Shown here: positions 16,988 to 63,028 of the stretch, one piece after another
Layout: every line of letters begins with the position of its first letter
Numbering within the stretch: position 1 is the stretch's first letter
IMG/VR virus record: IMGVR_UViG_3300046005_000547
Coordinates: 170,736-234,735 of that record
Reading direction: 5' to 3' (one strand)
Length of the DNA stretch: 64,000 bases
The notes under the pieces: model-generated
Databases searched by the model: none
What the model was told of the DNA's origin: nothing
The model's input: only the letters and a program-made list of their open reading frames with translations
Translations under genes and position numbers: made by a program

Positions 16988-17015
16988 ATTATAATGTTTT
17001 TTAGATTCATCGAAA
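16988..17015 (-). promoter_or_regulatory. Early-type promoter
   Basis: TTTCGA-N16-TATAAT. Confidence 0.75.
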
Positions 17016-23357: not shown

Positions 23358-23382
23358 AATTCCTCCTATTAAAGTAAGTTCT

Positions 23383-23410
23383 ATTATACTACTTTAAACG
23401 ATCTTCGAAA
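23383..23410 (-). promoter_or_regulatory. Early-type promoter
   Basis: TTTCGA-N16-TATAAT. Confidence 0.75.
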
Positions 23411-25499: not shown

Positions 25500-26200
25500 A
25501 ATTGTTAGTATAATGTATTAGATATAATCGAAAAAGAGTCTTGAAGTAATATAGAAAATAATAAAAGAATATTAAAATGAAACAATAGAACTAACTCAAA
25601 CCGTCGACATAGTCTAGTATACTGGGTTTTTATCGATTTCGAAAGGAGTAATTAGACGTTGATTATTACACATTCGATAACCTTGGTCTCTTTCGATACG
25701 TGATTATAATTGTTTCGATGTTAATGTTTAATTTAACAGTCTATATTGTTGTTTTAAGATGTATTAAATGTATCCTGTAGAGTTGATTGACATAATAAGG
25801 AAAGATTCCATTAGAGCGGATTATTGGACAAATAATGGATGTTAATGATTCAACATAGAATTGATATATTGTAAATTTCAAACAATAAAAATCCCGACAG
25901 AATTGTTCATTCTTATCGGGATCTGAGACTCAGAGATTTTATGTTGAATTATTGTATAGAATATATTCGATAAAGACATTAATATACTCTATAAAGAATC
26001 TAATAGTAATATAAAAGAATATAGAAAAACAATAGATACACTAACTGAAACGTCGACATAGTCTAGTATACTGTATTTTTTATCATTTCGAAAGGAGTAA
26101 TTAGACTCTGTAATAATCATATTTATTCGATATCCAGTCAATCTTAAGACGTATTCGATGTTCCTTTCGATACATGATATAATCAGTTTCGATGAATAAC
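25500..26200. repeat. Tandem cassette array A: two GTCGACATAGTCTA-anchored units, period 449 bp
   Basis: Anchors at 25603 and 26052; minus-strand promoters TTTCGA-N17-TATACT at 25616-25644 and 26065-26093; hairpin element 25738-25841; terminator 25884-25923. Confidence 0.9.
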
Positions 26201-26488
26201 TTCGATAGATTCAATCTTAACATTATTTGATTTACGTCTATCCAACATATATTCATTGACATTTAATCTAACGAAATTCTCCGATCCTGATACAATCTTA
26301 AATTTACAGATAATATCATATCGACCATCAACCAAGTTTGAATTGTTAAAATTACCGTCAGTTACTCGTTTTAATATGAAGTCAATGTTTGGACTGAACC
26401 ATTTGAATCTCTTGGTAAAATCCAATCTATCTTTTGAATTTTCATATTCCTTCAAACACATCGCTCTGTACATTATCATATCCATCAT
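26183..26488 (-). CDS. Hypothetical protein sitting inside the repeat scaffold
   Basis: RBS+ATG supplied by left end of hairpin element H3; 3' end overlaps TTCGA boxes. Confidence 0.7.
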   Translation of the reverse strand: MMDMIMYRAMCLKEYENSKDRLDFTKRFKWFSPNIDFILKRVTDGNFNNSNLVDGRYDIICKFKIVSGSENFVRLNVNEYMLDRRKSNNVKIESIEVIHRN

Positions 26489-27364: not shown

Positions 27365-27424
27365 AAAGTTCATTGGATTCTTCCAACTTGAACTCTATTA
27401 TAGTGGTTATCTTAATCATCGAAA
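27365..27424 (-). promoter_or_regulatory. Early promoter plus 5' stem-loop leader (PeSL-like)
   Basis: TTTCGA-N16-TATAAT at 27397-27424; 27365-27402 identical to 55430-55467. Confidence 0.8.
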
Positions 27425-28637: not shown

Positions 28638-28767
28638 TATTTTTTTCCTTTATCTTATTTGGTTTAATCTTCATTTAGAAATCTATTTAATAATATATTT
28701 GCGTTCGCTGTTATATCTCCAGTAAAACGAAAAATGGAGAAACCCGTTAAGGTCTCTCCAATCTTAT

Positions 28768-30138: not shown

Positions 30139-30318
30139 ATGTTTGCCCTTTTGTTTAAAATTACATTATACTCTATAATGTTTAAAATAGAAATCTTCTT
30201 AATACATTACATATAATACACAAATCTAATGGAGTTCAGAATAATATCTGAACTCCATGTTTATCACCAACTAATTGTCCATGTATAATTTACAGTGGAA
30301 TGTCATTTTCGATATTCA

Positions 30319-31047: not shown

Positions 31048-31059
31048 TTGGTTCTCCTG

Positions 31060-31596
31060 TTATTTTGTTGGGTCTAAATTCATTGATGCTTTACTTCTTT
31101 TGATGGCTTGTTCTCTGGTTGGATACGCTAATCCATTTTCAATATAAAACAATGATGAATGTTCATACTTCAACGTCGTATAAAAATTAGGATTCATGTT
31201 TGCTATATAGAAAATAGACCCTTCTCTAAATCCATCTCTTTGACCGTCTTCAACAAACCAACCATTTACGTTTATTTTTGGTAATTCTTTAATTCTTCTG
31301 TATTTTACTGTTCCTGATCGATGGTCATGAAAATCGGGGTGTTCTGTACAATTAACGTATCCAAATTGTGTTAATTTTTGCCATTTTTCATATGGTGTTG
31401 AATTATGTTTCCAATCTTCTGAATATGCATCAATCATAATGTTAATATCTCTACAATCGGAGAATTCCGTTACAATACAATTATCTCGATACATTCTATT
31501 ACATTTCCCGCATTTAAATTCATTTTGGTATCTAGAATCAACGCCCTTTTTAGATATAATACCATAACAATCTTCACAATGTAATTCATCTTGCAT
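31060..31596 (-). CDS. Hypothetical protein; N-terminal Cys pairs, C-terminal domain shared with 41065-41556
   Basis: CEDC..CGKC; INVNGWFVEDG...GLAYPTREQAIKRSKASMNLDP. Confidence 0.7.
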   Translation of the reverse strand: MQDELHCEDCYGIISKKGVDSRYQNEFKCGKCNRMYRDNCIVTEFSDCRDINIMIDAYSEDWKHNSTPYEKWQKLTQFGYVNCTEHPDFHDHRSGTVKYRRIKELPKINVNGWFVEDGQRDGFREGSIFYIANMNPNFYTTLKYEHSSLFYIENGLAYPTREQAIKRSKASMNLDPTK

Positions 31597-31626
31597 TTCT
31601 TATACTCTTAAAATTAACATATTTCT

Positions 31627-31654
31627 ATTATACTTTATAAAACGAAATAAGAAA
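31627..31654 (-). promoter_or_regulatory. Early-type promoter
   Basis: TTTCTT-N16-TATAAT. Confidence 0.55.
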
Positions 31655-31659
31655 GAATC

Positions 31660-32577
31660 TTATGTAATAAAAGTATGGTTTGTTGATTTAATATGTCTAG
31701 TTACATGGGATAGACTGTTTGTTTTAAATGAACAATCTTTACAATAATGCATTACATCAGGCGTTCTATTTGGATTTCTATCAGGATTTTGTTTACAATT
31801 ATCATTATGATATTTTGTTATAATCGTTTTATTTTCAGATTCAAATCCACAAACATTACAAAAATGTTTCTTTACGTTTCTATCTGGATTCTGTTTACAA
31901 TTATCTCCATGGTATCTAACATAATTACCTTTATTAGAATACACAAATTCTTCAGAACAATGAATACAAACAAATTTCGGTTCAATCGTGTCTAAGAATG
32001 ATTTGGTTTCCAACATTTTCTTGTTCATTCTATCTCGTTCTTCAGATGACATATTAACATGCCATTCTGTAACAAGTTCAGATCTTAAATCTTTTATGTA
32101 ACTTTGACTGATTCTAATTTTCTCACTAATTGCATTTTGTTCTTCTTGCGTTCGTTTGGAAATAGTGTCAGCAATTTGATTCTTAATCCTTAATTTTTCT
32201 TCTTCTGATTTGGATTTTAAATTTTTAGAATGTTCTATATTTTTGAAAATAGACAATTCAGAATATTGTCTACTTGTGATTCCTTTTTGGTATACTCTAC
32301 ACAATTTATGTAAAGTAGGAAACGATTTCTTTAATATCCAATGGGCAACATAATGTTGACGTTTTGTTAAAATTATTCTATTCCAAGGAAATAATGTAAA
32401 ACATTCAAATTCAGGAAACATATCACTACCTCTAGGTAAAATATGATGTTTGTCTGTATGTTTCATCTTAGGGTGATTCTTTCCTTGTAAAGATGTAATA
32501 AATTTTATGTATCTATTCAGATAATGTATATTGTGCGGTTTGGTGTGTAAATGTTCTATAAATGTATTGTTGTTCAT
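31660..32577 (-). CDS. HNH homing endonuclease with C-terminal zinc-finger repeats
   Basis: KHHILPRG...NRIILTKRQHYVAHWIL; two CxxC...YH.DNCKQNPDRN repeats. Confidence 0.85.
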   Translation of the reverse strand: MNNNTFIEHLHTKPHNIHYLNRYIKFITSLQGKNHPKMKHTDKHHILPRGSDMFPEFECFTLFPWNRIILTKRQHYVAHWILKKSFPTLHKLCRVYQKGITSRQYSELSIFKNIEHSKNLKSKSEEEKLRIKNQIADTISKRTQEEQNAISEKIRISQSYIKDLRSELVTEWHVNMSSEERDRMNKKMLETKSFLDTIEPKFVCIHCSEEFVYSNKGNYVRYHGDNCKQNPDRNVKKHFCNVCGFESENKTIITKYHNDNCKQNPDRNPNRTPDVMHYCKDCSFKTNSLSHVTRHIKSTNHTFIT

Positions 32578-32633
32578 GTTTAGTAATAATTGAAAAATGG
32601 AGATAGAATTGACCTATCTCCATGTGTATATTA

Positions 32634-33995
32634 TTATCCCATTAGATCTTCTAATGAAACTGATTCGAATTTGTCTTTTAAATCTTGATGATATTCATCT
32701 AACCATTGTTGTCCTTTATCGTGAATCAATAAGAAATCATACCATTCTTTTGAGTCAAACATATGAGGATAAACCCCATTAAAGAATTCATGCCATTTTG
32801 GATTTGTTTTATCATGTTTAGAATTTTCAACAAATTGTTTTCTATGGTCTTCATATTCTTTAGAACCACATTCTAACAATCCATGTCTAAAATATGAGAT
32901 GACGCTTACTCTATGTGCATCTGGTTCATTTTTGATAATTTTTGTATTACCATGCATGATTTTACTATTATCGACAATTAACAAATCTCCTGGTCTTACA
33001 TTAACAGCAATTCTATATTCAGGGAATACTAGATACCCACCAGAGTAATTATCATTGTTAGATAATACCAACAAATTAGAAATAGCATCCTGTAAATTGG
33101 CTGCATCGAAGTGGCAACCCGTAACCCACGTGTTATTTACAGTTAGAGTGGTGAACACTGTTTCGGGAATCAAAAATGCTGGATCGATTTTATCTGTGGC
33201 ATCTTTTTGTAATTGCCATCTTCTTGGCATTAAATCTCTGAATCCTCGATTTAATGACTGGATAAATGGGTAACATTTTTTAAATTTATCAAAATGATGG
33301 TCTGTATAAGCAGTAGCTCTACCATAAGGTTGACGAGGATATCTACTCCACCACCCACAAACTCCACTCATGGCAGGAACCGCCATTGACGTTCCAGATA
33401 CATGTTTCTTATGGATTCGGATAGCTTCTGCTTGAGCATCTTCTCTACTCATCTTTGATAATGAATCCACCCATGATTCAAAATCAAACATTTCCTCACC
33501 ATACAGAACCCAGACGACACCCTTTGTTACAGTGGTATCATCTTTACGTTTCCGTAATTCAGATAATGTATCGTCATCATATAATGAATCTAACGGATTC
33601 ATGAAGTAATCAAAGATTGAACGTTGGTAATCAGATACATAATTACGTTTGGCATCTTTGTTGTTCGATTTATCGCGTTCTGTATATTTACCAGCAGCAG
33701 TTCCTCTATTGTTTGAAATAGTGGCAGCATCTTTCAATCCTTCTAATGCCATGTCTTGTTCTTCTTTTGTGAAGAAGTTCTTACGAAACTTGAACGCAAC
33801 TCTGAATTCATCAATACCTTTATCGCATGAATGACATTCAGATACACAATCAAGTTTTGTTGATAGGTCACAGACTGGTGGAGTATAAACGTCCGCATCT
33901 GATTCAATTAAAACATCATAAAATGAATCATCAATGAATGTTCCCAGTAAATGTTCACAATCAAGTTTTTCTTTTGCTACAATAATTTGAACCAT
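32634..33995 (-). CDS. TET/JBP-family 2OG-Fe(II) dioxygenase, paralog B
   Basis: PETVFTTLTVNNTWVTGCHFDAAN; IMHGNT; HRVSVISYFRH. Confidence 0.9.
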   Translation of the reverse strand: MVQIIVAKEKLDCEHLLGTFIDDSFYDVLIESDADVYTPPVCDLSTKLDCVSECHSCDKGIDEFRVAFKFRKNFFTKEEQDMALEGLKDAATISNNRGTAAGKYTERDKSNNKDAKRNYVSDYQRSIFDYFMNPLDSLYDDDTLSELRKRKDDTTVTKGVVWVLYGEEMFDFESWVDSLSKMSREDAQAEAIRIHKKHVSGTSMAVPAMSGVCGWWSRYPRQPYGRATAYTDHHFDKFKKCYPFIQSLNRGFRDLMPRRWQLQKDATDKIDPAFLIPETVFTTLTVNNTWVTGCHFDAANLQDAISNLLVLSNNDNYSGGYLVFPEYRIAVNVRPGDLLIVDNSKIMHGNTKIIKNEPDAHRVSVISYFRHGLLECGSKEYEDHRKQFVENSKHDKTNPKWHEFFNGVYPHMFDSKEWYDFLLIHDKGQQWLDEYHQDLKDKFESVSLEDLMG

Positions 33996-37016: not shown

Positions 37017-37056
37017 TTGTAGATCCTCAAGTAAAGTATAAAAGTAATTACGTTCT

Positions 37057-37084
37057 ATTATACTTTACATTTAGAGATTCGAAA
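37057..37084 (-). promoter_or_regulatory. Early-type promoter
   Basis: TTTCGA-N16-TATAAT. Confidence 0.75.
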
Positions 37085-38098: not shown

Positions 38099-38187
38099 TA
38101 GTGATTATGTTAAAATTTCTACATCTAAATGTTGATTCGGATAACCAACAAATACATTATAATTGATTATCCGTTAAAAGTAAAATC

Positions 38188-38667
38188 TTATCTATCGTTA
38201 TTTAAAATCGAATCATTACAATTCCCTTTAATTGAACCATTCACTGTTGAACATTTACCACCAATAGAACCTCCGACTTTAACGTTTCCATTGGTCGTTT
38301 TTACGTTACCAGCGACATTCTTTTCAATCTTAACGGATCCATTCGTGGTTTCGACTTCACCAACATCTCCAGTAACAAATACGTTTTCGCATACGTCTAC
38401 TTGTAATGATTCGATATTACCATTAATTGTGATGTTAATTGTTTTCTCATCATCAGAATTCACCAATTTGTCATTAACATACACTTTATTGTTTACAACT
38501 CGAACGTTTCTACCACCAGCATATTGTTTATCGTTTACAATAATACTACCAGCAACGTTATCTGTATCTTTTGAATTCCAAAATGCCATTTTATTTCTCC
38601 ATCTTCTTGAAAATGGTATCACAAATCTTAGGAACTTGTTCTCCTGCCTTACCTTCAAAGAATTCAA
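38188..38667 (-). CDS. Beta-helix repeat protein (DUF4097/adhesin-like)
   Basis: Repeats GDVGEVETTNGSV / GNVKTTNGNV / GKCSTVNGSI. Confidence 0.6.
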   Translation of the reverse strand: MNSLKVRQENKFLRFVIPFSRRWRNKMAFWNSKDTDNVAGSIIVNDKQYAGGRNVRVVNNKVYVNDKLVNSDDEKTINITINGNIESLQVDVCENVFVTGDVGEVETTNGSVKIEKNVAGNVKTTNGNVKVGGSIGGKCSTVNGSIKGNCNDSILNNDR

Positions 38668-39280
38668 ATTCAGCCCACATTGTTGATGGTTTAACTAAAT
38701 CCACCAATAAAATTTTACAGTCTGAACCGACGGCATCCAATAATGACGCAGCAGGATAAACTGATAACGACGTTCCAACCACAACCATGTAATCATAATG
38801 TTCTTCTTTAATCATTGCATATGCAGTTTCAAACATCGGAACATCTTCATAGAAGAATACAATATGTGGTCTTAATTGATTACCTTGTTCAGATAATGTT
38901 CCCACAAACATATCATCAGTCCAATCATATGTAAATCCTGTTACGGTATCTCTTGCTTTAAGTAATTCGCCATGTAGATGGATAACTTTGCTGGAACCTG
39001 CTCGTTCATGTAAATTATCAACATTGGTTGTGATGACTGTTACATCATGATATTGTTCCAATTCCTTGATAGCAATATGTGCTGCATTAGGTTCAACAGT
39101 CTGAACTTCTTTGCGTCTCATGTTATAAAATTCATGAACCAATTCAGGAGTTTCGGCTAATGCCTTTGGTGTACAAACATCTTCAATGTTGTAGTTGTTC
39201 CATAATCCATCTGAATTTCTAAATGTACTCAGACCAGATTCAGCTGATATACCAGCACCCGTTAAAAATAATATCTTCAT
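38591..39280 (-). CDS. Sir2/CobB NAD-dependent deacylase
   Basis: TGAGISAESGLSTFR, TNVDNLHERAGS, HLHGEL, LRPHIVFF, VGTSLSVYPAA. Confidence 0.93.
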   Translation of the reverse strand: MKILFLTGAGISAESGLSTFRNSDGLWNNYNIEDVCTPKALAETPELVHEFYNMRRKEVQTVEPNAAHIAIKELEQYHDVTVITTNVDNLHERAGSSKVIHLHGELLKARDTVTGFTYDWTDDMFVGTLSEQGNQLRPHIVFFYEDVPMFETAYAMIKEEHYDYMVVVGTSLSVYPAASLLDAVGSDCKILLVDLVKPSTMWAEFEFFEGKAGEQVPKICDTIFKKMEK

Positions 39281-41556: not shown

Positions 41557-41655
41557 TTTGTTCTCCTTTGTTAAGATGGTTCTATTATACTATACTTTTT
41601 CAATATCCAAAGAAAAACCTAGCTGATATTTCTACCAACTAGGTTCTCTGATTAT

Positions 41656-42975: not shown

Positions 42976-43485
42976 TCATACGTATTCCAATACGTTACAT
43001 TTCAATCCGTTCTCCAATATATCACATAAGATTACCTCGATATATCTCTCAAACTTCTTAACATCAAACACCGAATCAGCTGGTCTGTAATGCACGTTGT
43101 ACTTATAATTGATTACTCTATCATCGTCATCTGAATACACTGGTGGTAACTCGATATCCTCGAATGAGATAATCCATCCAACGTATTCTTCCTTCAATTC
43201 AATCGCTGTAATCTTATCTCCCAAATCGTTAATGTAACTAATTACTTCATATTTGTTTGATTTTAAAGGAATATCCCTAATTACTACAGGCGTTGCTTCC
43301 AACTCCAATACATTATCGTATTGGTCTACAACTTGAATGTCTGTATAACCAATTGATGAGAGATAAGAGATAACTGACTGGTATCTCTGGTCATCGTCAA
43401 TTCCATCCGGCAATTCTCTGATGTTCGATTCTTGGTCTTCGATGATAATTGAATCTTCTAAGTATCTTACTGTAAATTTAATCAT
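42976..43485 (-). CDS. Hypothetical acidic protein
   Basis: Coupled to UvsX stop. Confidence 0.6.
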   Translation of the reverse strand: MIKFTVRYLEDSIIIEDQESNIRELPDGIDDDQRYQSVISYLSSIGYTDIQVVDQYDNVLELEATPVVIRDIPLKSNKYEVISYINDLGDKITAIELKEEYVGWIISFEDIELPPVYSDDDDRVINYKYNVHYRPADSVFDVKKFERYIEVILCDILENGLKCNVLEYV

Positions 43486-44566
43486 CTAAGTCATCCATTT
43501 CCAAGGTATCTAATTCTGCTGTAATATCCGCATCAGTCACTAAATCGCCCGATAATTTGAATTCTTCTTCAATCTTACGTTGGAATATAGGACAATTCAA
43601 TAATGGATCCCAAAATTCAGCAGTATCGGTAGCAGCTCTTCTTAACTTTTGAGGTTCAATTTCACCAGTAGCTAAATCAACTCTTGAGAACCAACCATTA
43701 CTCGGTTTAACAACAGCACCAATATCGATAGCAATATCTAATAAACCAGAGTATTTTTGAATACCACCATCATATTTTACAACAAATGGTAATTTAGATT
43801 TTTCTTTAACATTTCTTGATTTATGAATGTTGATTGTGAATTTCCATCCATCCAATTCACCATCACTAGATTTTTCTTGAGATTTAGTGATAACAAAAAT
43901 TTGATTGGAGGAATACGTCACGGCAGTACCTCCTGGAATTACAACTTTTTGATAGAGCTCGAGTGTAAGATAAACATGGTTGATAAGGAAACATGGTAAA
44001 TTCTTTTTACTTAATTGTATTGTAGCCAATCTCAATAATGACCTTAAACTTTTTGCACGCGTCATATCTACAGTTGATTTTTCATCACTTGTATCATCAA
44101 CTTCTTTTTTTGAACTAATTTGACCAATTGAATCAACCAAAAAGAATACATGGTCACCCCTTTCAATTGAATCTAATTTCTTCATGAAATCGAATTTTAA
44201 TTGTTCAATATGTTCCACTGGAATATGGATTACTCTAGTTGGATCTATTTTAAAACTTTTAATGTAATCAGGAGTGATTCCAAATTCAGTATCATATATA
44301 ATTCCAATGGCGTCATCATATTTGTCCAAATACGCTTTCATACAATATAGAGCCAGAGCCGTCTTAAAAGTTTTGCTATCTCCAGCTGCCGTTGTAATTC
44401 CAGGTGGCACACCACCGTCTAATTTACCATGGAATGCAATATTCAGAATTGGTAAATCTGTCACTGCCAACGGTTTTACTCCAAACATATCAGAATCGGC
44501 TAAAATAGAAGCTCCTGTTGTTGACCCAGTTTTTAACAATTTGTCCAATAATTTATTTTTGCTCAT
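43478..44566 (-). CDS. uvsX: RecA-like recombinase UvsX
   Basis: AGDSKTFKT Walker A; YDTEFG; VDSIG; DMTRAK; INHVY; GGTAVTYSS. Confidence 0.95.
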   Translation of the reverse strand: MSKNKLLDKLLKTGSTTGASILADSDMFGVKPLAVTDLPILNIAFHGKLDGGVPPGITTAAGDSKTFKTALALYCMKAYLDKYDDAIGIIYDTEFGITPDYIKSFKIDPTRVIHIPVEHIEQLKFDFMKKLDSIERGDHVFFLVDSIGQISSKKEVDDTSDEKSTVDMTRAKSLRSLLRLATIQLSKKNLPCFLINHVYLTLELYQKVVIPGGTAVTYSSNQIFVITKSQEKSSDGELDGWKFTINIHKSRNVKEKSKLPFVVKYDGGIQKYSGLLDIAIDIGAVVKPSNGWFSRVDLATGEIEPQKLRRAATDTAEFWDPLLNCPIFQRKIEEEFKLSGDLVTDADITAELDTLEMDDLDD

Positions 44567-46100: not shown

Positions 46101-46430
46101 ATGCATATAACAAGTAAGCCGATAAACGATTTATATAATCATTATAAGAATTCAGCAGCGTCCCGATCTATCCCATTTACATTAACCAAATTGGATTTCC
46201 ACGAATTGTCCTTTCCATTGACATGCCCTATTTTGGGTATGCCGTTGAGATTTAATACAGGAAGAACGATGTCAGATGATTCTTATTCATTGGACAGGAT
46301 AGATTCAAGTTTGGGATATACAAAGGAGAATTGTATAGTGATATCAAATAGAGCAAATATCTTGAAGAGAGATGCTACATTGGATGAACTTCAGAAATTG
46401 TGTAAATTTTATACAGAGTTGTTGAATTAG
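46101..46430 (+). CDS. His-Me finger (HNH/EndoVII-like) endonuclease
   Basis: CPILG...SLDRIDSSLGYTKENCIVISNRANILK. Confidence 0.8.
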   Translation: MHITSKPINDLYNHYKNSAASRSIPFTLTKLDFHELSFPLTCPILGMPLRFNTGRTMSDDSYSLDRIDSSLGYTKENCIVISNRANILKRDATLDELQKLCKFYTELLN

Positions 46431-54247: not shown

Positions 54248-55396
54248 TCATTTTTGTACAAAAACGAATGTACAATTACCAGAATCAATCATACAAGTTT
54301 TTAATTTGTTTTTTAATTCTAATGGTGACATCTGGTCGATGTATTGGAACGTCATTTCAATGTCATGGGTTTGTTCAAGTTTATATTGAGAATGAACTTG
54401 AAATCCACTGATACAACTGACAATCAATAATCCACCAGCAATGTTAATGAACATTTTATCTTTGTCATGTTTTTGTAGATAATACAAACTATAACAAAGG
54501 ATAACGATAATTGCGTAATTTGCTTGTAATAGATACGACCACATTTCATCCACCTAAGATTAAACTTGATACATAGACTTGTTGTATCTTATTTGTAGAT
54601 AAGAAATGTACAAGTATATTAACGTGATGATTGTTACCCGTCAAGAACGGTTCGGATATGATTTTACATCTGGCTCTTTCTGGGTGAAATGTAGCAAGTT
54701 GTCCCAATAAAGAACTGTTAATTGAAACGTTCATTTAATACTCATCCTGATTAGACCAGTATTCATAAGACATTTCCAAAAGGACATCTTCAAGGTTAGA
54801 TAATGTTTCTGGTAAAAATTCATCCCAATGTATATTGGCAACAATTTCTCCATCATTACCATACCAATACATTCTTTCGATAAATTCTCCTGTTATAACA
54901 ACCGTTGTATTAACACCGTTGAACACCACTTCATATTTACCTTCTGGTAAAGGTGGAACATCATTGTCTGAATCATGTCCATTAAAGAACCAGTTATCGT
55001 AATCGCTTGACATTGTATTATCCTCTATTGAAATAAGTTGAAAGAAGTTTCTTTATCAACAAAGACTGAAAGATGTTTAACATTTTCATATAATGCCATC
55101 ATTTCTTCACCCTCCCCTTTGTAATTGCATAATTCACAAATCAATAATTCTGGATTGTATTCAACTCCGAATTCTTCTTTGAAACGGATTGTTGGTTCAA
55201 TGTAACAGAATTTACGTTCATTGTCAGACAAATCGTTCCATTCTTCCATCAACATTTCCATGTATTCAGACGCTTGGTAAGGTTTTGAACGGAACATGTT
55301 TCTGTACATTTTGTTTGCTTGTTCAAATGTTCTTGGATCTTTCAAACCAGCTTCAAGAGCTTCAGCTAATTCAGTTTTGAAATTTGGATTTGACAT
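54248..55396 (-). other. Small hypothetical ORFs (54248-54553, 54546-54734, 54735-55013, 55025-55396)
   Basis: Packed ORFs downstream of promoter 55462-55489. Confidence 0.6.
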
Positions 55397-55429
55397 AATA
55401 ACCACCTTATATAGAGTTCGTTTAATTTA

Positions 55430-55489
55430 AAAGTTCATTGGATTCTTCCAACTTGAACTCTATTATAATGATTTTTATTTACATCGAAA
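55430..55489 (-). promoter_or_regulatory. Early promoter plus stem-loop leader identical to 27365-27402
   Basis: TTTCGA-N16-TATAAT at 55462-55489; 38-bp identity. Confidence 0.8.
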
Positions 55490-56136
55490 GAACTTTCTAA
55501 AGATTTAATATAAAAATTAATGTCGTGTGAATTTTTAATAAATTTACCAGTCAATCTATCTTTGATTATGTCCATTATATTACAGTCTTGAACGATATTC
55601 CCTTTGGAATTTATATACATTAAAATCCCATGATGTCTATAAGGATAAATCGGAGTCATGGGAGCATAATCATACGCAGCAGCAAATCTATAATGTGTTG
55701 ATTTAACGTTATCCACAAATTCTTTATTACCAATTCTAGGGGATCCAAAAGAATATATGACACAATCATCTCTGTCGATTAAATGTGAAAAGATAACTGC
55801 GATTGCACCACCCAATGAATGTCCAGTCAAATATAATTTTTTATTTTTGTCTAATCTATCACCCAATGATTCCAATAACAATTCAGAATATCTCAAGAAT
55901 CCACTTTGAATCCCTTTTTTCAATGTAAATGATATATCAGCAATCCAATCTTCTGGTTCGTCAGTGCCTCTGAATACAATTATTTGTTCAGTTTCTGATT
56001 CCAATAAGAATGCTTGCGCAAAACAATTTGAAAATAATTCAACAGAATACCCTTGTACAGTTATTGAATCGTTGTATGATTGTTTAGATAGATTAGCGAA
56101 GAATAATGCTTCATATAGAATCATAAATCTGTCCAT
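55435..56136 (-). CDS. Class 3 lipase (alpha/beta hydrolase)
   Basis: IVFRGTD, LTGHSLGGAIA nucleophile elbow, SFGSPRIGN, HDI..Y. Confidence 0.9.
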   Translation of the reverse strand: MDRFMILYEALFFANLSKQSYNDSITVQGYSVELFSNCFAQAFLLESETEQIIVFRGTDEPEDWIADISFTLKKGIQSGFLRYSELLLESLGDRLDKNKKLYLTGHSLGGAIAVIFSHLIDRDDCVIYSFGSPRIGNKEFVDNVKSTHYRFAAAYDYAPMTPIYPYRHHGILMYINSKGNIVQDCNIMDIIKDRLTGKFIKNSHDINFYIKSLESSFDVNKNHYNRVQVGRIQ

Positions 56137-57787
56137 TCTCTATCAATAAAATAAGACCAAGCATACAACCAAAGTAAAATATACAATGGAAATGCATATT
56201 TGATGTTGAACCAGTCCAATTTTAAGTGTTCCAAATAAAAGAAAGGAAATACACCACATGTAATTGGACTGAATATAATAATGAGATACCATAAATTCTT
56301 TTTCATTTAATATCTCATGGAGTCATATAATGTATCTGTTGAATCTGAAATTGTATATACGGATCCTTGACCGTCGTATCTTCTGAAGAGCAACCCTCGA
56401 TATTCATAACAATATGACATGAACATAGAATCTTCATCCGTTGATTCTACTCCAAATTCGGCGGCGGTTTCAAATAATGCATTATTAAAGAATCTACATC
56501 TACCATTATTCGATTTGTCGATAATCTTATGTAAAACAATTTTAAAGTCTGCGTCAGATAATCCATTTAGATAAACGCCAAATTGTTCTTCGCGTTCTTC
56601 TTGTCGTCTCAACATTTTAAAATGTTTATCTAAAGATGCTTCTCCTTCAGGAGTGTTCATCCAATCTATCATTGATTGTATTGGGTGTTTATTATTCGAC
56701 ATGTAATACTCTCTTCAAAAACGATTCAAGGTGTTCAACCATTTCTTTATGGACATCCATTATGTTATCGATATATTCAGAATTTGTAAATGGTTCTAAT
56801 TTATCGATGTAATGACTGTACATTGAACTTACTAATGCAGAAATCGGTAACACAATTATTGATACCAATGCAATCATTAACGCAACAACTTGAATCGACC
56901 AATATATAAACGTTCTGTATAAGATTTGTCTCATTTATCCTCCAATTTATGGAAAATTTCAATATCAACTTCTGATTCCCAATCCAAGTATTCTTTTAAC
57001 ACAGATAATCCATTATCGTCGCATAAATCAATTTTGTTGAAACTCCAAGGTCCGTCATGTTCTTTTACATGTTGAATCCTGAACGATCTATAATTTTGTT
57101 TAAAGATAATACAGACATCAGAACGAACCGAGCTTAAAAAGATATTGTAATCTATTGTGTTTATTGAAGAATCCTTTCCTCGAAAATGTAAATACTTTTT
57201 GATTTCTTTCAATAACATATTATTCTCTATATTTGTTTGTGAACAAAGCATCATATAATAATTTTGTATATCCAATAACAGCGATACACCCGACAATCAT
57301 AAACAACGCATTCCAAATCATAACCACTCCTCAATAATGTTTAACAATTCGTCGATAGTCTCAAATTTACCATTATCTACATCGATTATAACATAATCTC
57401 CATCCCCTTTAAGACAACAAATCACTTCGCCTATTTGTTTACCGATATCTACAACCATTTTAATTGTGGTGTCTGTATTAGTTAATTCAAACACTCTACC
57501 AACCGTCGAAGGATAATTTCTAATCAGGAACTTTGTTCTCAATAATTCATTGAATTGGATCTGATTATGTAATGATTCTTTCTTCATGACGATCACCCTT
57601 CACATTTAACTGAATACCCAAGGATTGAATCTTGGTTCATTTGTTCCAACAATTTGACTTGTTCTTGTTTTCCTCTGATGCATTCAGAACGAGAAGGATA
57701 CCCAATTTTGTATTCATGATTCACCAATTCAGTTTGTCCACCAGTGATTATTGATGCAGAGAGAAAGGAAACGATTAAGATTGACAT
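56121..57787 (-). other. Small hypothetical ORFs (56121-56306, 56307-56702, 56692-56934, 56931-57296, 57318-57596, 57593-57787), several membrane-associated
   Basis: Packed ORFs downstream of promoter TTTCGA-N16-TATAAT at 57844-57871. Confidence 0.6.
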
Positions 57788-57899
57788 TGTTATTACCTCA
57801 TAAAATTGTAAATGAAATTCAGGATTAAACCAACTTGAAATCTATTATAATGATTTTAATATACATCGAAAGGAATTTTCCAGTTGAAATGTATATAAA

Positions 57900-59560
57900 A
57901 TAAAGTCGAGGAAGACACTAAAAGAAAACCTAAAAACAATAGATACACTAACTCAAACCGTCGACATAGTCTAGTATATCCGAGTTTTATCGATTTCGAA
58001 AGGAGTATTCTTATCATGTAATAATCATATTCGATGCTTACGGTTATCCTTCGATGTCCTTAATGCTCTTTCGATATGTTGAATTTACAGTTTCGATGTA
58101 ATCATTAAATCCTTTCCAATTATTTGTTGTTTAAGATGGATTCATTATATCCTGTAGAGTTGATTGACATTTAACATAAAGATTCCATTAGAGTGGATTA
58201 TTGGACAAACAATAGATACATTAGGGTTGTTTTGGAATGACAATTCTGTATATTGAATCCAATAAAAATCCCAACAGAATGTTTAGTTCATATTGGGATT
58301 CTGGATGACAGAGATTTTATGTTGAATAATTGATATAATAAAGTCTATAAAATGTCTTGTGATGATATAATAAAGTCTATAAAGAGTCTTGAAGTAATAT
58401 AAAAGAATACTAAAACGAGTAAAGAACATTAATAGAACTAACTCAAACCGTCGACATAGTCTAGTATACTGGGTTTTTTATTATTTCGAAAGGAGTATAA
58501 GACGATGATTATTACACATTCGATACATTATTTCATCTTAAGATTCCGTTTCGATGTTTAATATGTTCTTTCGATATGTTGAATTTACAACTTCGATGTT
58601 CTTGTTTATTATAGACATCCATATTGTTGTTTTATGATGGATTCAATATATCCTGTAGAGTTGATTGACATATAATGGAAACGATCCATTAGAGCCCATT
58701 AACGAGCAAATAATGGATATATTAAGAATGATTCGGAACAAACATATTGTAAATTTCAAACAATAAAAATCCCACTCAGAATAAATCTGGCGGGATCTGA
58801 ATGACGGAGATTTTATGTTGAATATAGATGATTATATTATGTCGTTGTAGTAATATAATAATGTCTATAAAGAATCTAATAGTAATATAGAAGAACACTT
58901 AATGAAAGTAAAGGCAATAACTGAAACGTCGACATAGTCTACTATAATTGAATTTCGTCGAAAAGTCAAGAGAAATCTTTAGCTTGTAATAATCATATTC
59001 GATGCCTTAGATTATCGAACAATACCTTTAATGCTCTTTCGATACATGGTATCTATTGTTTCGATGTTAACATAAAATCCTGTCCAGTTATTTGCTGATT
59101 TAAGATGGAGAGATTTTATGACATAGAGTTGATTGACATAATATACAAAGATTCCATTAAGATGGAATATTGGACAAATAATGGATGTTATATGATTGGA
59201 TTGAAATCATATTATGTAAATTTTAAACAATAAAAATCCCAACAGAATGATTAGTTCACGTTGGGATGAATTATAAAGTCGATAAAGAATCTTGAAGTAA
59301 TATAGAAAACAATAAAAGAATATAGAAATGTTATTAAAGGTAATAACTGAAACGTCGACATAGTCTACTATACCCGAGTTTCTGACATTTCGAAAGGAGT
59401 TTAAGACGTTGATTATATCAAGCTCGACGTTTCGTGTATTCTTAAGACTCTTTCGATACATTGAATTTACATCTTCGATGTTAACATTTAATCCTACATG
59501 GAAATTTGCTGATTTAAGGACGATTCATTATATCCTGTAGAGTTTCCTGTCATACATAAT
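57900..59560. repeat. Tandem cassette array B: four units, no credible genes
   Basis: GTCGACATAGTCTA anchors at 57960, 58450, 58928, 59354 (periods 490, 478, 426); hairpin cores at 58150, 58651, 59119, 59533; terminators at about 58261-58300, 58762-58797, 59229-59267. Confidence 0.95.
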
Positions 59561-59629
59561 AAAAACATGTTAAATTGTATTATTGAACAAACAAATAAAT
59601 AAATAAATAAAATAACAAAAGGATAATCC

Positions 59630-62431
59630 ATGAAAACCTTCACTGACATACGCAAACAAATCAACGAGAACAGTCTTTATACTTCTCAACAAGAGAAAGA
59701 CGACTTCCTGAAAGATAAAAAGAAAATTGTAACTGCATTCTTATACTCTTTCATCGGTAATCTATCTCTTTACAATAAAGACTCTGCCAAAGCAAAACAT
59801 TATTTCTTATCGGATAAGAAATTACAGATTGTCAACATCAATGACGATAACAATGATGCGTCTTTAATTCTGAAAATCATGCATGATGAACATGGATTCA
59901 AGAATACAAACACTGCCAATGAGATGACTAAATTATTGGCAAAATTGAAAGTCTCGGATGTATCATCATTCGATGATGCAATTATCAGAGCATGGTTGTC
60001 GGATCTATCTCCTGCGTTCCATTCCGCTATCCCAACGGATTTGAAAAAGACTGTCGATGATTACATGAATAGTGTCACCAGTTTCGATAGATTGAGTTAC
60101 AAATTGTATAAACATAAGACTGCTTATGGTGACGGAGAGTATCTTGATTTGGCAAAGAAAGTTGGTCGAATCGAAAGACATACACATAAACCGAAAGTCG
60201 TAGTGACTCCAACTGCATCTGCCGTTCCACCTACATTAGCAAATCCTCAGATATTTGTTCCTACCGTTAATACATCGACTGCTGTTGTTACAACTCCACC
60301 GGATGTTATAGATGAACCTATTCAAATTGTTGAGAAAGAACCAGAAGTTAAACAATTCAATCAAGAATTGTATGACAAATTTAAAGTTAAAAATTTATTG
60401 AGTGATGATGAATGGGATGAATTGATTGAGGATAAAGAAGTTTTCGTTAAAATAATGATTGAATCTCCGAAACGATTATATACAACCCAATACCATAAAA
60501 TTAGAAAAGTTATGTTCAAAGAATTATCGGAAGAACAACTCATGGAAATGAAGAAAGTCTCCTGGAATTTAGATGTATTTAAATATGATATCAAAGATTC
60601 AATCATGATTCTGAAAGATAGAAATATGGATTTCGTTAAGATTTTTGGACCTTTACGAGTTGCGCAATATATGTGCGACAAAGATATTTCCGCGGGTAAA
60701 GAAATCATTGATTTTTATACTGAACAAAAGATCTTAATTTCAACTGATAATGGTAATCGTATTGTAAAGGATTTTCCAGAAATCTTAGTGGATGCAGTTA
60801 AATTGACAATCAAAGACATGGGAGTCGATTATGGTAGCTCGATGGCTGTTCATTTAAATCAACAACAAATTGATGAAATTTATGATGTTAATGATAGATT
60901 ACTTGTATTACGAAATGTTGTATTGACTGGTAGATTGATAAAGGATCCAGTTGATTTATTGAAGAAATTCAATTACAATGAAGTTTTAATCAAAGCTGGT
61001 TTAGAAAATACAAGTGTGCCTCATTTCACGCCGTATCTAAATTCAATGAATAAATTGTTCATGGAAGATATGGATAAATGGTATCCATGGGAACGAAAAT
61101 ATAGTTACATTAAACAATTATTCACCAAACCAAATGTAATTGATTATTTCAATGATAAATTTAAAAGAGCATTTACGGATGATGGTGTATTTGAATACTT
61201 CGACGACAAAGAACGATTAGATGGTATTTCATCATCATTGTTTGATTTGTTAGTATCCAATTATAAAACCAAACCGGAACTTGTTGATTCTATCTTCAAT
61301 GATTTTGGTGATAAGATTAAAACAAGAGTCAAAAAGAATTTCAACTCGACATTCAGAGTGATGCATGATTTAAAAGATAGCGCATTACCAATCAAAGAAG
61401 AACTAGATGCCAAATCTATTCAAGCTATCTTGGAATTCAATGACATCGACCTTAGTGTAATTTCTGGCACCAAAATGAAATTCTCTAAGAACAAATCGTT
61501 AAGTCAAACAATCAATGATTTTGTTAAAGATGAATCTGTTACCACTATTGAACCATTGAAAATTGTTGATTTGAAAACATCTGATGCAGATAACAAGAAG
61601 TTATCTCAGAAGATTGTTGATGAAACGCATTCTGGTGGTAAACATGGGGACATCTATCCATTAGTCTTACGTCAATTTGAAGTTCATCTACCAGATGATA
61701 AATTCCAAGAGTTCAAAAAATTGATGATTCAGAATAATTCACATAAAGAGATTGTTCCTGCTTTCCATGGCACTGGTTCTATTGCAGCTAATATGATTCT
61801 TAGATATGGATTTAAAGTGTTACCAGAACAAAGTAATTCTGCTATTGGTATACAAGGTAGAATGTTAGGTGATGGTATTTACTTTGGTACCAATATCGAC
61901 AAAGTATTACAATATGTTGGTAATAAAGGAATGACCAGAAGACTTGGTACAACTGGATATGTATTTGAAATGGAGAACGAACTTGGGGTAAAAGGTAATG
62001 ATTACAAAGAAGCTGGGTTGGGTAATGATAAAATTGCTTCGCCAGAATGGGTTGTATTTGATGCCAACAGACAATTAAAAATTATTAAGGCGTATGAAGT
62101 GAAATTGGTAGATAAATCAGAATTAGATAAATCATTAAATGAATCAGTCAAACCAAGAATGATGTCATTCAAAGAATATGTTGATATCAAGAAGAACAAT
62201 TATACATCATACAATTTCTATGACAGAAATGTAATTACGCCTGATGGCAAAGTAATCAAATCGACTGATGTAACAGACACTACATTTAAGAAAGGTATTA
62301 GAGTTGAAATCAGAGGAAGAATTACATCAGTGATTATTCCAACGAAACAATTAGAATTCAATGATGTATTGAGTTGTTATGATTTACAGGATAAACAATT
62401 AGACAAGTATCTTCGTCTATTGAATAAATAA
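59630..62431 (+). CDS. Large PARP-like (H-Y-E) ADP-ribosyltransferase, probable injected head protein (functional analogue of T4 Alt)
   Basis: N-term MKTFTDIRKQINE; catalytic motifs AFHGT, GRMLGDGIYF, SPEWVVF; (TAAA)n late-promoter-like tract and AAGGA RBS upstream. Confidence 0.8.
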   Translation: MKTFTDIRKQINENSLYTSQQEKDDFLKDKKKIVTAFLYSFIGNLSLYNKDSAKAKHYFLSDKKLQIVNINDDNNDASLILKIMHDEHGFKNTNTANEMTKLLAKLKVSDVSSFDDAIIRAWLSDLSPAFHSAIPTDLKKTVDDYMNSVTSFDRLSYKLYKHKTAYGDGEYLDLAKKVGRIERHTHKPKVVVTPTASAVPPTLANPQIFVPTVNTSTAVVTTPPDVIDEPIQIVEKEPEVKQFNQELYDKFKVKNLLSDDEWDELIEDKEVFVKIMIESPKRLYTTQYHKIRKVMFKELSEEQLMEMKKVSWNLDVFKYDIKDSIMILKDRNMDFVKIFGPLRVAQYMCDKDISAGKEIIDFYTEQKILISTDNGNRIVKDFPEILVDAVKLTIKDMGVDYGSSMAVHLNQQQIDEIYDVNDRLLVLRNVVLTGRLIKDPVDLLKKFNYNEVLIKAGLENTSVPHFTPYLNSMNKLFMEDMDKWYPWERKYSYIKQLFTKPNVIDYFNDKFKRAFTDDGVFEYFDDKERLDGISSSLFDLLVSNYKTKPELVDSIFNDFGDKIKTRVKKNFNSTFRVMHDLKDSALPIKEELDAKSIQAILEFNDIDLSVISGTKMKFSKNKSLSQTINDFVKDESVTTIEPLKIVDLKTSDADNKKLSQKIVDETHSGGKHGDIYPLVLRQFEVHLPDDKFQEFKKLMIQNNSHKEIVPAFHGTGSIAANMILRYGFKVLPEQSNSAIGIQGRMLGDGIYFGTNIDKVLQYVGNKGMTRRLGTTGYVFEMENELGVKGNDYKEAGLGNDKIASPEWVVFDANRQLKIIKAYEVKLVDKSELDKSLNESVKPRMMSFKEYVDIKKNNYTSYNFYDRNVITPDGKVIKSTDVTDTTFKKGIRVEIRGRITSVIIPTKQLEFNDVLSCYDLQDKQLDKYLRLLNK

Positions 62432-62955: not shown

Positions 62956-63028
62956 GTTTGTTCCTTTTAATTTTAAATTAGAATCAATTATAATGATTTC
63001 GCATTATATCGAAAGACTTTAATTATAT

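What the first reader, a model, noticed from the sequence alone, without database searches (positions are those of the whole stretch)
57960..59395. Predicted family of 130-190 nt small RNAs with fixed 5' and 3' ends and variable U-rich middles
Seen: each minus-strand promoter points at a terminator with no gene between (about 59358 to 59229, 58932 to 58762, 58454 to 58261, and 26056 to 25884 in array A). All would start AUGUCGAC(G)GUUU(C/G)AGUUA, and three end with CAACAUAAAAUCUC followed by the AUCCC stem. Inference: constant scaffold plus variable middle resembles guide, antisense or antitoxin-mimic RNAs (compare the pseudo-ToxI repeats of phage phiTE).
Basis: inference. Interest (0 to 1): 0.6.

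Follow-up and report, generated by a model that had tools for sequence, protein, structure and literature searches.

The report
Gene-less promoter–terminator cassettes, giant phage
The predicted small RNAs come from real-looking short transcription units, but these are gene-less copies of a repeated promoter–terminator cassette that heads, insulates and reshuffles the gene blocks of a T4-like giant lake phage, not a set of guide or antitoxin-mimic RNAs.

Summary
The four units lie within 3 nt of the stated coordinates. Each has a promoter, an invariant ATGTCGA start, a U-rich body with no conserved ORF and a strong intrinsic terminator.

They belong to a larger family. The 234.7-kb T4-like phage carries 24 such promoters in seven arrays, and 15 are gene-less units giving predicted RNAs of 130-194 nt. 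A related 249-kb phage has the same layout, also with 15 gene-less units.

The guide/antisense/ToxI reading is not supported:
- The bodies are unstructured (fold z about 0).
- The "variable" middles are mosaics of blocks shared among units.
- No antisense target exists in the phage.
- Rfam finds nothing.

The same promoter, leader and terminator type also frame real genes: an HNH endonuclease, a 44-aa ORF and the first gene of five modules.

All six differences in module order or orientation between the two phages fall at arrays.

Best reading (about 0.55): these are empty PeSL-like regulatory cassettes that serve as module promoters, insulators and recombination linkers. Their short RNAs would then be terminated leader transcripts.

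A trans-acting RNA role (about 0.22) is not excluded. The gene-less units keep a conserved 3' block of their own and compensated terminators. No RNA data exist.

The parts
59367..59395 (-). Promoter of unit a: TTTCGA (-35, 59395-59390), 17-nt spacer, TATAGT (-10, 59372-59367), then AGACT and ATG
59232..59361 (-). Gene-less transcription unit a, predicted 130-nt RNA. It lacks the conserved 3' block. Terminator hairpin 59267-59236 plus U5
59124..59184 (-). Spacer module: weak hairpin CCATTATTTG...TAATGGAAT followed by the CAATCAACTCTA box (59135-59124). The same module heads real ORFs elsewhere
58999..59067 (-). Run of ATCGAA/TCGA boxes, about 21 nt apart, upstream of promoter b. These are inverted copies of the -35-type box
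58941..58969 (-). Promoter of unit b: consensus sigma-70 type, TTGACT-17-TATAGT
58765..58935 (-). Gene-less unit b, predicted 171-nt RNA. 3' block CAACATAAAATCTC. Terminator hairpin 58798-58767
58656..58716 (-). Spacer module (hairpin plus CAATCAACTCTA box) between units b and c
58463..58491 (-). Promoter of unit c: TTTCGA-17-TATACT
58264..58457 (-). Gene-less unit c, predicted 194-nt RNA, with an internal 32-nt repeat (58331-58402). Terminator hairpin 58302-58265
58155..58215 (-). Spacer module (hairpin plus CAATCAACTCTA box) between units c and d
57973..58001 (-). Promoter of unit d (TTTCGA-17-TATACT). This is the last promoter of the array and leads into genes
57788..57967 (-). Leader of about 180 nt of the first mRNA of the module. 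Its first ~70 nt match those of the gene-less units. It contains a second promoter, TTTCGA-N16-TATAATAG, at 57871-57842
57593..57787 (-). First gene of the module (64 aa, no Pfam family)
26065..26093 (-). Array A: promoter TTTCGA-17-TATACT
25887..26059 (-). Array A: gene-less unit, predicted 173-nt RNA. Terminator hairpin 25921-25892
26183..26488 (-). 101-aa ORF occupying the slot behind the CAATCAACTCTA module (box at 26547-26536). It is conserved at an array in the related phage. Gene-less units keep only its ATG and last codons
25616..25644 (-). Array A: last promoter, start at 25610, leading into gene 24985-25485

Best explanation
Each predicted RNA gene is a gene-less copy of a repeated regulatory cassette spaced about 465 bp apart.

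A cassette holds, in order:
- a hairpin/CAATCAACTCTA module;
- 4-6 ATCGAA boxes about 21 nt apart;
- a sigma-70-type promoter, with TTGACT or the palindromic TTTCGAAA at -35 and TATAGT, TATACT or TATGAT at -10;
- an invariant start region ATGTCGA;
- 90-150 nt of unstructured U-rich leader;
- a strong intrinsic terminator of the phage's standard ATCC...GGATTTTTATTG type.

RNA polymerase should start at every promoter and stop at every terminator, so discrete RNAs of 130-194 nt are expected. This step is inferred. They are best read as terminated leader transcripts of empty expression slots, because the same promoter, leader and terminator type also frame real genes.

The arrays of 2-5 co-oriented cassettes lie at the borders of 15-35-kb gene modules. 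They would do three things:
- supply the module's first promoter (what is shown is that the last promoter abuts the first gene in five of seven arrays);
- stop transcription from crossing into the next unit (inferred from the compensated terminators);
- provide stretches of up to 95 bp of exact homology, through which T4-type recombination inverts and transposes whole modules and adds or drops cassette genes (shown by comparing the two phages).
For: Family size and layout:
- 24 promoters in 7 arrays in the 234.7-kb genome, each array in one orientation.
- The related 249-kb phage has the same architecture: 24 promoters plus one with an inverted core, and 15 terminated units.
- Unit spacing is 421-513 nt.

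Cassette logic:
- G000 72805+ drives a 213-aa HNH_3 endonuclease gene that ends at the same type of terminator.
- G000 162980- drives a 44-aa ORF conserved in the relative.
- Five promoters lead into the first gene of a module.
- The same ATCC..GGATTTTTATTG terminators end about 20 ordinary genes, and at some sites a TTTCGA-type promoter follows directly.
- The spacer's CAATCAACTCTA module heads real ORFs at four or more other places. Gene-less units retain only the start and the last codons of the 101-aa ORF.

The RNAs look like plain leaders:
- no conserved ORF;
- body fold z about 0;
- no consensus structure;
- mosaic middles;
- no antisense targets in the phage;
- no Rfam hit.

Terminators are under selection. 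All 30 fold into hairpins of 10-17 bp. There are 25 distinct sequences, with several different stem families that all keep full pairing.

Recombination:
- All six rearrangement junctions between the two phages lie at arrays, in both genomes.
- Units are more alike within a genome than between genomes, which indicates concerted evolution.

Assembly support:
- Inter-array exact repeats are at most 95 bp.
- An independent contig from another sample is collinear with G000 through arrays 1, 2, 6 and 7 at 95.9-100% identity, 99.97% or more through arrays 1, 2 and 6.
- Unique parts of the array are at single-copy depth in three lake runs.
Against: - The gene-less units have a conserved 3' block of their own, absent from gene-bearing cassettes. 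In G000 it is AAAATCTCTG, with all 11 genome copies in arrays. In the relative it is CATATAAAATCC. It is among the most conserved segments of the unit.
- Both phages keep 15 gene-less units. Arrays take about 5% of a headful-limited genome. An 'empty slot' would be expected to decay or be lost.
- Compensated terminators show that ending each short transcript matters. That fits a selected RNA product as well as it fits insulation.
- Promoter activity, start sites and termination are predicted only, and no RNA run holds this phage.
- The module order of the related phage rests on a single metagenome assembly.
Confidence: 0.55

Rival explanations
1. The RNAs are the selected product. They would be a 15-gene family of abundant early, unstructured U-rich non-coding RNAs. 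They would act in trans in one of two ways: through the single-stranded conserved 5' end as a seed on host mRNAs, or as decoys that copy the 5' leader of the phage's own early mRNAs and soak up a host factor such as Hfq, RNase E or Rho, or a phage regulator.
For: - Each unit has its own promoter and terminator and no ORF.
- The 5' 18 nt are conserved and unpaired.
- The conserved 3' block is found only in gene-less units.
- Terminators are kept by compensatory change.
- The number of units is equal in two diverged phages.
- Length is confined to 130-194 nt.
- The body is G-poor (10% G, 16% C, 42-44% U) and unstructured, a composition generally suited to single-strand RNA-binding proteins (the link to specific proteins is my own knowledge).
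Against: - The fixed 5' end is shared with ordinary mRNAs, so it need not be an RNA-level feature.
- Middles are mosaics rather than distinct targeting sequences.
- There is no complementarity to the phage genome beyond chance.
- The host is unknown, so host targets cannot be tested.
- There are no expression data.
Confidence: 0.22
2. The arrays are DNA-level nucleoprotein sites. The phased ATCGAA boxes would be iteron-like binding sites. The promoter plus AT-rich downstream region would act as replication origins of the T4 or lambda kind (transcript as primer or activator) or as regulator sinks. On this reading the short RNAs are by-products or primers. Origin activity would also explain why the arrays are recombination hot spots.
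For: - TCGA is five-fold enriched in arrays: 14.2 against 2.8 per kb.
- There are 4-6 boxes per unit at about 21-nt spacing, and the box-to-start distance is quantised in steps of about 10-11 nt: 183, 194, 204, 216, 226.
- The -35 region is a perfect palindrome, ATTTCGAAAT, and the invariant start region is a near-palindrome.
- The seven arrays are spread every 20-35 kb around the genome.
- Rearrangement breakpoints fall at arrays. That T4 origins are recombination hot spots is my own knowledge.
Against: - TTTCGA is also the -35 element of about 25 ordinary dispersed promoters, so the boxes may be promoter-derived.
- No MotA or AsiA was found, so there is no T4 middle-mode origin promoter.
- U-rich RNA makes weak RNA:DNA hybrids, which suits R-loop priming poorly (inference).
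- Strong terminators are not a feature of known origin transcripts.
- No initiator protein was identified.
Confidence: 0.1
3. Conditional termination. The shared 5' leader would be a recognition site for an antitermination factor (nut- or put-like). Short RNAs would be made early, and later read-through of the stacked promoters would boost the downstream module.
For: - All cassettes of an array point towards the downstream module.
- Every transcript carries the invariant leader start.
- Promoters are stacked behind strong terminators.
Against: - The leader has no conserved hairpin or other structure.
- No antiterminator gene was recognised.
- The last promoter of an array already has no terminator before the genes, and a second promoter lies closer to them.
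Confidence: 0.08
4. The units encode small hydrophobic peptides translated from a leaderless AUG at the transcript start.
For: - ATG is invariant at the predicted start.
- In G000 the frame stays open for 12-55 codons in 13 of 15 units.
Against: - The frame closes after 4 codons in all 15 units of the related phage and in 2 of the 15 in G000.
- Lengths and sequences are not conserved.
- Indels are not in multiples of three.
- There is no ribosome-binding site.
Confidence: 0.03

Closest known systems
PeSL / PmSL cassettes (promoter-early or promoter-middle stem-loops) of T4-like phages RB49/phi1, PST/T4 and nt-1/KVP40 (PMC2839356, PMC4122927)
   Same: - The host genome is a T4-superfamily phage.
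- The elements are repeated composites of a sigma-70-like promoter and a stem-loop terminator.
- They make a gene an autonomous, insulated cassette.
- They sit where related genomes differ by insertion, deletion or rearrangement.
- The proposed mechanism, homologous recombination between copies, is the same.
- This genome also has compact terminator-then-promoter junctions outside the arrays.
   Different: - PeSLs are small elements in which the stem-loop sits just upstream of, or within, the promoter. They lie singly between ORFs of hyperplastic regions and end with a ribosome-binding site and start codon.
- Here the repeat is spaced about 465 bp apart, with two promoter-like modules, phased boxes, a 90-150-nt leader and a downstream terminator.
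- Most copies hold no ORF.
- They stand in tandem arrays of 2-5.
- They bound whole 15-35-kb modules that have been inverted or transposed.
- There is no sequence similarity.
Long repeat regions separating genome modules in Campylobacter group II T4-related phages CP21, CP220 and CPt10 (PMC4546147)
   Same: - Low-GC T4-related phages whose genomes are built of large modules separated by repeat regions.
- Modules are inverted between close relatives.
- Unit numbers vary between phages.
- Some repeat regions enclose genes.
   Different: - The Campylobacter units are 72-86 bp with a 13-nt core, up to 18 per arm. No promoter or terminator role is reported for them.
- Here the units are complete transcription units of about 465 bp, arranged in seven arrays.
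- There is no sequence similarity.
Tandem multi-copy bacterial sRNA genes with their own promoters and terminators (for example Listeria LhrC1-4, Vibrio Qrr1-5; my own knowledge)
   Same: - Several paralogous short units, each with its own promoter and Rho-independent terminator.
- A conserved single-stranded segment.
- No ORF.
   Different: - No target complementarity was found.
- The conserved 5' end is shared with mRNAs.
- The units carry about 290 bp of conserved non-transcribed signals.
- Expression is unknown.
ToxI antitoxin RNA and the pseudo-ToxI repeats of phage phiTE
   Same: A phage-borne repeated non-coding element that could give many copies of a short RNA.
   Different: - ToxI is a run of ~36-nt direct repeats transcribed together and cut by ToxN into pseudoknotted monomers (my own knowledge).
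- Here each unit has its own promoter and terminator and is 130-194 nt.
- The units are unstructured.
- Rfam gives no match.

Membership tests
PeSL-type regulatory cassette | Found in a T4-superfamily phage | tested here: met
   The UvsX homologue carries the T4 UvsX C-terminal domain and is about 51% identical to those of phiM12 and Aeh1. A DnaB-like helicase and an RNR are present, and the Alt-like protein has homologues in Aeromonas T4-like phages.
PeSL-type regulatory cassette | Repeated composite of a sigma-70-like promoter and a stem-loop terminator | tested here: met
   24 promoters carry TTGACT or TTTCGA at -35 and TATAST at -10 with a 17-nt spacer. All 30 terminator hairpins fold. Activity itself was not tested.
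PeSL-type regulatory cassette | Compact element with the stem-loop at or just upstream of the promoter, ending in a ribosome-binding site and the ATG of the next gene | tested here: not met
   In the arrays the terminator lies about 290 nt upstream of the next promoter and 130-194 nt downstream of its own. 15 of 24 units have no ORF. Compact terminator-promoter junctions exist only outside the arrays.
PeSL-type regulatory cassette | Lies at indels or rearrangements between related phages | tested here: met
   Six of six rearrangement junctions lie at arrays in both genomes. The HNH cassette is present in G000 array 2, while the matching pair of promoters in G001 is only 476 nt apart, too close to hold it.
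Campylobacter group II phage repeat regions | Repeat regions separate large modules that are inverted between relatives | tested here: met
Campylobacter group II phage repeat regions | Units of 72-86 bp with the shared 13-nt core | tested here: not met
   Units here are spaced 421-513 nt apart. blastn against 50,697 phage records found no match.
ToxI / pseudo-ToxI | Tandem ~36-nt repeats in one transcript, matching the ToxI covariance model | tested here: not met
   Tandem repeat finder reports only 2 copies of a 21- or 32-nt repeat inside units. Each unit has its own promoter. Rfam gives no hit at E<=1 or at gathering score.
ToxI / pseudo-ToxI | Similarity to a host toxI locus or an adjacent toxN | not testable with these tools
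   The host is unknown. The unit's start motif occurs in none of 185,579 species genomes.
Trans-acting base-pairing sRNA family | Own promoter, Rho-independent terminator, no ORF | tested here: met
Trans-acting base-pairing sRNA family | Complementarity of a conserved unpaired segment to target mRNAs | tested here: inconclusive
   None was found in the phage genome beyond chance. Host targets cannot be tested because the host is unknown.
Trans-acting base-pairing sRNA family | Expressed as a discrete stable RNA | not testable with these tools
   No RNA run holds the sequence.
T4-type replication origin (oriF/oriG) | MotA-dependent middle promoter | tested here: not met
   No MotA (PF09158) or AsiA (PF09010) match in the genome.
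T4-type replication origin (oriF/oriG) | Persistent R-loop in a downstream unwinding element | not testable with these tools
   The downstream region is 74% A+T. Hybrid formation cannot be assessed.

The most novel reading that the evidence does not exclude
The gene-less cassettes are dedicated genes. The phage would devote 15 of its 24 array-type promoters, taken here (by inference) to be its strongest early ones, to an abundant family of unstructured, U-rich, G-poor RNAs. These copy the 5' leader of its own early mRNAs and would act in trans as decoys or sponges for a host RNA-binding factor or a phage regulator. That would make it a multi-copy phage sRNA system, built into the same repeats that reshuffle the genome.
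Probability: 0.2. Interest if true: 0.75.

Novelty: new variant of a known kind. Interest (0 to 1): 0.45.

Why it matters
If the reading is right, this uncultured giant lake phage shows an extreme form of the regulatory-cassette idea proposed for T4-like phages. Complete promoter-leader-terminator units, mostly empty, stand in arrays at every module border, so whole 15-35-kb blocks can be inverted or moved and still be transcribed and insulated.

This gives a concrete, testable picture of how large virulent phage genomes are rearranged without breaking their expression programme.

It also yields a compact set of portable signals:
- three promoter classes, taking the array and dispersed TTTCGA types together: TTGACT-17-TATAGT, TTTCGA-16/17-TATAAT and TAAATAAT;
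- one terminator type.
These help annotate related metagenomic phages.

If the short RNAs instead prove to be functional, this would be, to my knowledge, the largest sRNA gene family reported in a phage.

Tried and rejected
- Known RNA families. Rfam found nothing at E<=1 over 55000-60500 or at gathering score over the whole window.
- DNA similarity to 50,697 phage records: none.
- Small-protein reading. The ORF from the +1 AUG is 4-55 aa in G000 and always 4 aa in G001.
- Conserved RNA structure. Bodies have z about 0, and RNAalifold on the first 75 nt gives no structure.
- 5'-3' panhandle. Mean duplex energy is -4.4 kcal/mol, against -3.4 for other body windows. Rejected.
- Antisense targets in the phage. 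Reverse-complement and same-sense short hits are symmetric, and the best is 16 nt inside a 571-aa ORF.
- T4 middle-mode machinery. No MotA or AsiA.
- The 3' block as a late promoter. The motif enriched upstream of structural genes is TAAATAAT, not the block's ATAAAATC.
- A boxA-like reading of the CTCTTTAT motif. The related phage has a different sequence there, so I did not pursue it.
- Expression data. No RNA run holds the phage.
- Population variants. Logan contigs break at every repeat, and the 'joints' are cross-mapping of paralogous units. This says nothing about isomers. It does show single-copy depth of the unique parts in three runs.
- More relatives. The unit's start motif occurs only in four IMG/VR contigs from three samples. 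It occurs in no metagenome contig and no bacterial genome. Protein-based searches with the neighbouring Alt-like gene found the same two relatives.
- Assembly artefact as the source of the rearrangements. This is judged unlikely, because exact inter-array repeats are at most 95 bp and a second contig confirms G000 through four arrays. It is not excluded for the single G001 assembly.
Full report
OBSERVATION. On the minus strand of 57,960-59,395 there are four copies of TAGACTATGTCGAC, and two more lie at 25.6-26.1 kb. That is six in the window against 0.21 expected from shuffles. Three of the four in the finding region, and one in array A, are followed 130-194 nt downstream by a long hairpin and a U-tract. 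Counting from the A of ATG, the units run 59361->59232, 58935->58765, 58457->58264 and 26059->25887. The quoted 5' and 3' strings are correct, and the 59361 unit lacks the 3' block. The hairpins fold at -12.8 to -18.2 kcal/mol with z of -2.9 to -4.2. The bodies fold no better than shuffles, with z between -0.3 and +0.1. The fourth promoter, at 57967, and the one at 25610 run into genes.

WHAT THE GENOME IS. The window is part of a 234,735-bp virus record that closes on a 127-nt overlap. It has 30% GC. It comes from lake-water metagenomes and reaches a depth of about 1000 in one run. It belongs to the T4 superfamily. Its UvsX is about 51% identical to those of Sinorhizobium phage phiM12 and Aeromonas phage Aeh1. 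It has a DnaB-like helicase and a ribonucleotide reductase, and a 933-aa Alt-like protein has homologues in Aeromonas T4-like phages.

THE FAMILY IS MUCH LARGER THAN FOUR. The genome holds 24 copies of the promoter core, all in seven arrays of 2-5 co-oriented units. The arrays lie near 42, 73, 105, 141, 163, 196 and 229 kb. The 24 copies divide as follows:
- fifteen are gene-less terminated units of 130-194 nt;
- five lead into the first gene of a block;
- two drive a gene that ends at the same kind of terminator;
- two are atypical.
Unit spacing is 421-513 nt. A related phage (G001, 249 kb) has proteins 71% identical where tested (the Alt-like protein) and coding DNA about 75-79% identical. 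It has the same architecture: 24 promoters, again 15 terminated units (145-194 nt), and arrays at comparable intervals. A third contig (G002) is 98.9% identical over the array and has the same unit number and spacing. No other contig in IMG/VR carries the start motif. Neither does any JGI metagenome contig or any of 185,579 species genomes.

ANATOMY OF A UNIT. Reading along the transcribed strand after a terminator:
- First comes a weak hairpin, CCATTATTTG...TAATGGAAT.
- About 35 nt later comes the box CAATCAACTCTA. Elsewhere in the genome this hairpin-plus-box module stands in front of real ORFs.
- Next is a short stretch that keeps the ATG and last codons of the 101-aa ORF found at 26183-26488.
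- Then come four to six ATCGAA boxes about 21 nt apart. TCGA is five-fold enriched in arrays.
- Then the promoter. It is either TTGACT-17-TATAGT or the palindrome ATTTCGAAAT, with TTTCGA 17 nt from TATACT, TATAGT or TATGAT. Both promoter types occur in both phages.
- The most conserved stretch of the whole unit runs from -6 to +8, TAGACTATGTCGA, at 1.9 of 2 bits.
- The body is 42-44% U, 30% A, 16% C and 10% G.
- Most gene-less units end with a conserved block, and then a hairpin beginning ATCC and ending GGATTTTTATTG. The block is CAACAT(T)AAAATCTCTG in G000 and CCCATATAAAATCC in G001.

ARE THE RNAs GUIDES, ANTISENSE RNAs OR ANTITOXIN MIMICS? The evidence is against this.
- The middles are not unit-specific. 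Between 69 and 100% of each RNA (most above 90%) lies in exact 12-mers shared with another unit of the same genome. Length differences come mostly from one to three copies of a 21-32-nt internal repeat.
- There is no consensus structure in the first 75 nt, and no 5'-3' pairing beyond background.
- Against the array-masked genome, reverse-complement matches (1404, best 16 nt) are no better than same-sense matches (1592, best 16 nt).
- Rfam finds nothing.
- The units are not protein-coding. The ORF from the +1 AUG is 4-55 aa in G000 and 4 aa in every G001 unit.

THE UNITS ARE GENE-LESS VERSIONS OF A GENERAL EXPRESSION CASSETTE.
- In array 2 the same promoter and leader drive a 213-aa HNH_3 endonuclease gene. 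It ends at an ATCCC...GGGATTTTTATTG terminator and is followed by the usual spacer.
- In array 5 they drive a 44-aa ORF that is conserved in G001.
- The terminator type is the phage's standard one. About 20 ordinary genes end with it, and at some of these sites a promoter follows directly, which is the PeSL arrangement.
- TTTCGA is the -35 element of a second, dispersed promoter class, TTTCGA-N16-TATAATAGA. There are 8 in the window against 0.05 expected, and about 25 in the genome, mostly within 80 nt of an ORF start. One lies between the last array promoter and the first gene, at 57871-57842.
- Structural genes are instead preceded by TAAATAAT-like motifs.
- MotA and AsiA are absent.

ARRAYS AND GENOME ARCHITECTURE. 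I fetched the whole of G001 and compared it with G000 by tblastx. The two genomes consist of the same seven or eight collinear blocks, but in different order and orientation:
- G000 43.9-72.0 kb is inverted in place;
- 106.1-139.7, 143.3-160.3 and 163.3-194.9 kb are inverted and permuted.
All six junctions fall at arrays 1-6 in G000 and at six arrays in G001. No junction lies elsewhere. Array 7, the one in the finding, is the only array that is collinear in both. The junction gaps total about 7% of the genome, so six of seven arrays landing in them by chance has odds of roughly 1e-6 (my own arithmetic).

Misassembly is the obvious worry, and three results argue against it:
- the longest exact repeat shared by two arrays is 92 bp in G000 and 95 bp in G001, shorter than the 127-nt overlap on which the record closes;
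- G002, from another sample, is collinear with G000 through arrays 1, 2, 6 and 7;
- the unique parts of array 7 are at single-copy depth in three lake runs.
G001's order still rests on one assembly. Units resemble each other more within a genome than between genomes. That is the signature of ongoing exchange among copies.

MOST LIKELY MECHANISM (confidence about 0.55). What is shown:
- the layout of the signals;
- their reuse around real genes;
- the compensated terminators;
- the coincidence of arrays with rearrangement junctions.
What is inferred: host RNA polymerase fires at each promoter and stops at each terminator. The 130-194-nt RNAs would then be terminated leaders of empty slots. The arrays give each module its first promoter and insulate neighbours. 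They also offer homology through which the phage's own recombination system (a UvsX homologue at 43478-44566) flips, moves or refills modules and cassettes.

The main rival (about 0.22) is that the RNA is the selected product, for example a decoy of the shared leader. Four facts keep it alive:
- the 3' block is private to the gene-less units;
- 15 units are maintained in both phages;
- the units cost about 5% of the genome;
- the terminators are under selection.
Lesser rivals are iteron-like or origin sites (about 0.10), conditional antitermination (about 0.08) and leaderless micro-peptides (about 0.03).

COMPARISON WITH WHAT IS KNOWN. The closest concept is the PeSL/PmSL cassette of T4-like phages (PMC2839356, PMC4122927). 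Next are the repeat regions that separate and invert modules in Campylobacter group II phages (PMC4546147). This case shares the logic of both, but it differs in four ways:
- the unit is a full two-promoter transcription unit spaced about 465 bp apart;
- most units carry no gene;
- they stand in tandem;
- they bound every module.
There is no sequence similarity to either. I therefore rate it a new variant of a known kind. The ToxI comparison fails on its defining features.

LIMITS. No expression data exist. The host is unknown. Start sites are predicted to within about 2 nt. The temporal class of the promoters is inferred. The comparison rests on two diverged genomes plus one near-identical contig.

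Noticed in passing
window 16986-17015, 23381-23410, 27395-27424, 37055-37084, 41582-41611, 55460-55489, 57842-57871, 62985-63014 (all minus strand): A phage-wide promoter class, TTTCGA-N16-TATAATAG(A), with an A-rich upstream region. There are 8 in the window against 0.05 expected and about 25 in the genome, mostly within 80 nt of an ORF start. The -35 element is unusual, and no MotA or AsiA is present, so what recognises it is open.
   Followed up: partly
window 27366-27392 and 55431-55457 (minus); also G000 9290, 28739, 228584: An identical 27-nt leader, TTCAAGTTGGAAGAATCCAATGAACTT, with a possible 5-bp hairpin UUGGA/UCCAA. It follows several TTTCGA-type promoters and looks like a second conserved 5'-UTR family of unknown role.
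   Followed up: no
window 27432-33995 and 38591-39280 (minus): A probable DNA hypermodification cluster: an amino acid:DNA transferase (PF18724), two Tet/JBP dioxygenases (PF12851) with three ORFans between them, and a SIR2-family protein nearby.
   Followed up: no
window 59630-62431 (plus): A 933-aa protein, divergent from the array, with a weak PARP-type ADP-ribosyltransferase match. It has homologues in Aeromonas and Stenotrophomonas T4-like phages, so it looks Alt-like. A segment of about 200 nt (60382-60582) differs between otherwise 96-99% identical contigs.
   Followed up: partly
G000 73924 (+), outside the window; G001 40628 (+): One array promoter has no terminator and no gene. It reads antisense into the 3' end of the convergent structural-gene block. 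The arrangement and downstream sequence are conserved in the related phage, so it may give an early antisense transcript.
   Followed up: no
G000 72942-73583 (+), locus L005:1644-2285: An HNH_3 homing-type endonuclease gene sits inside array 2 as a cassette. The matching pair of promoters in G001 is only 476 nt apart. An endonuclease inside a recombination-prone array could itself promote exchange.
   Followed up: partly
G001 about 10,484-10,497 (locus L031:1685): In one unit the 11-nt core AGACTATGTCG is inverted in place between GAT and ATC. The invariant start region is a near-palindrome (TAGAC-TAT-GTCGA), which hints at a dimeric binding or cutting site.
   Followed up: no
window 55435-56136 (minus): A class-3 lipase / alpha-beta hydrolase gene lies among the ORFan early genes downstream of the array.
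   Followed up: no
window 46101-46430, 38129-38686, 23447-24172 (plus): A few plus-strand ORFs are embedded in an otherwise minus-strand gene run. I did not examine them.
   Followed up: no
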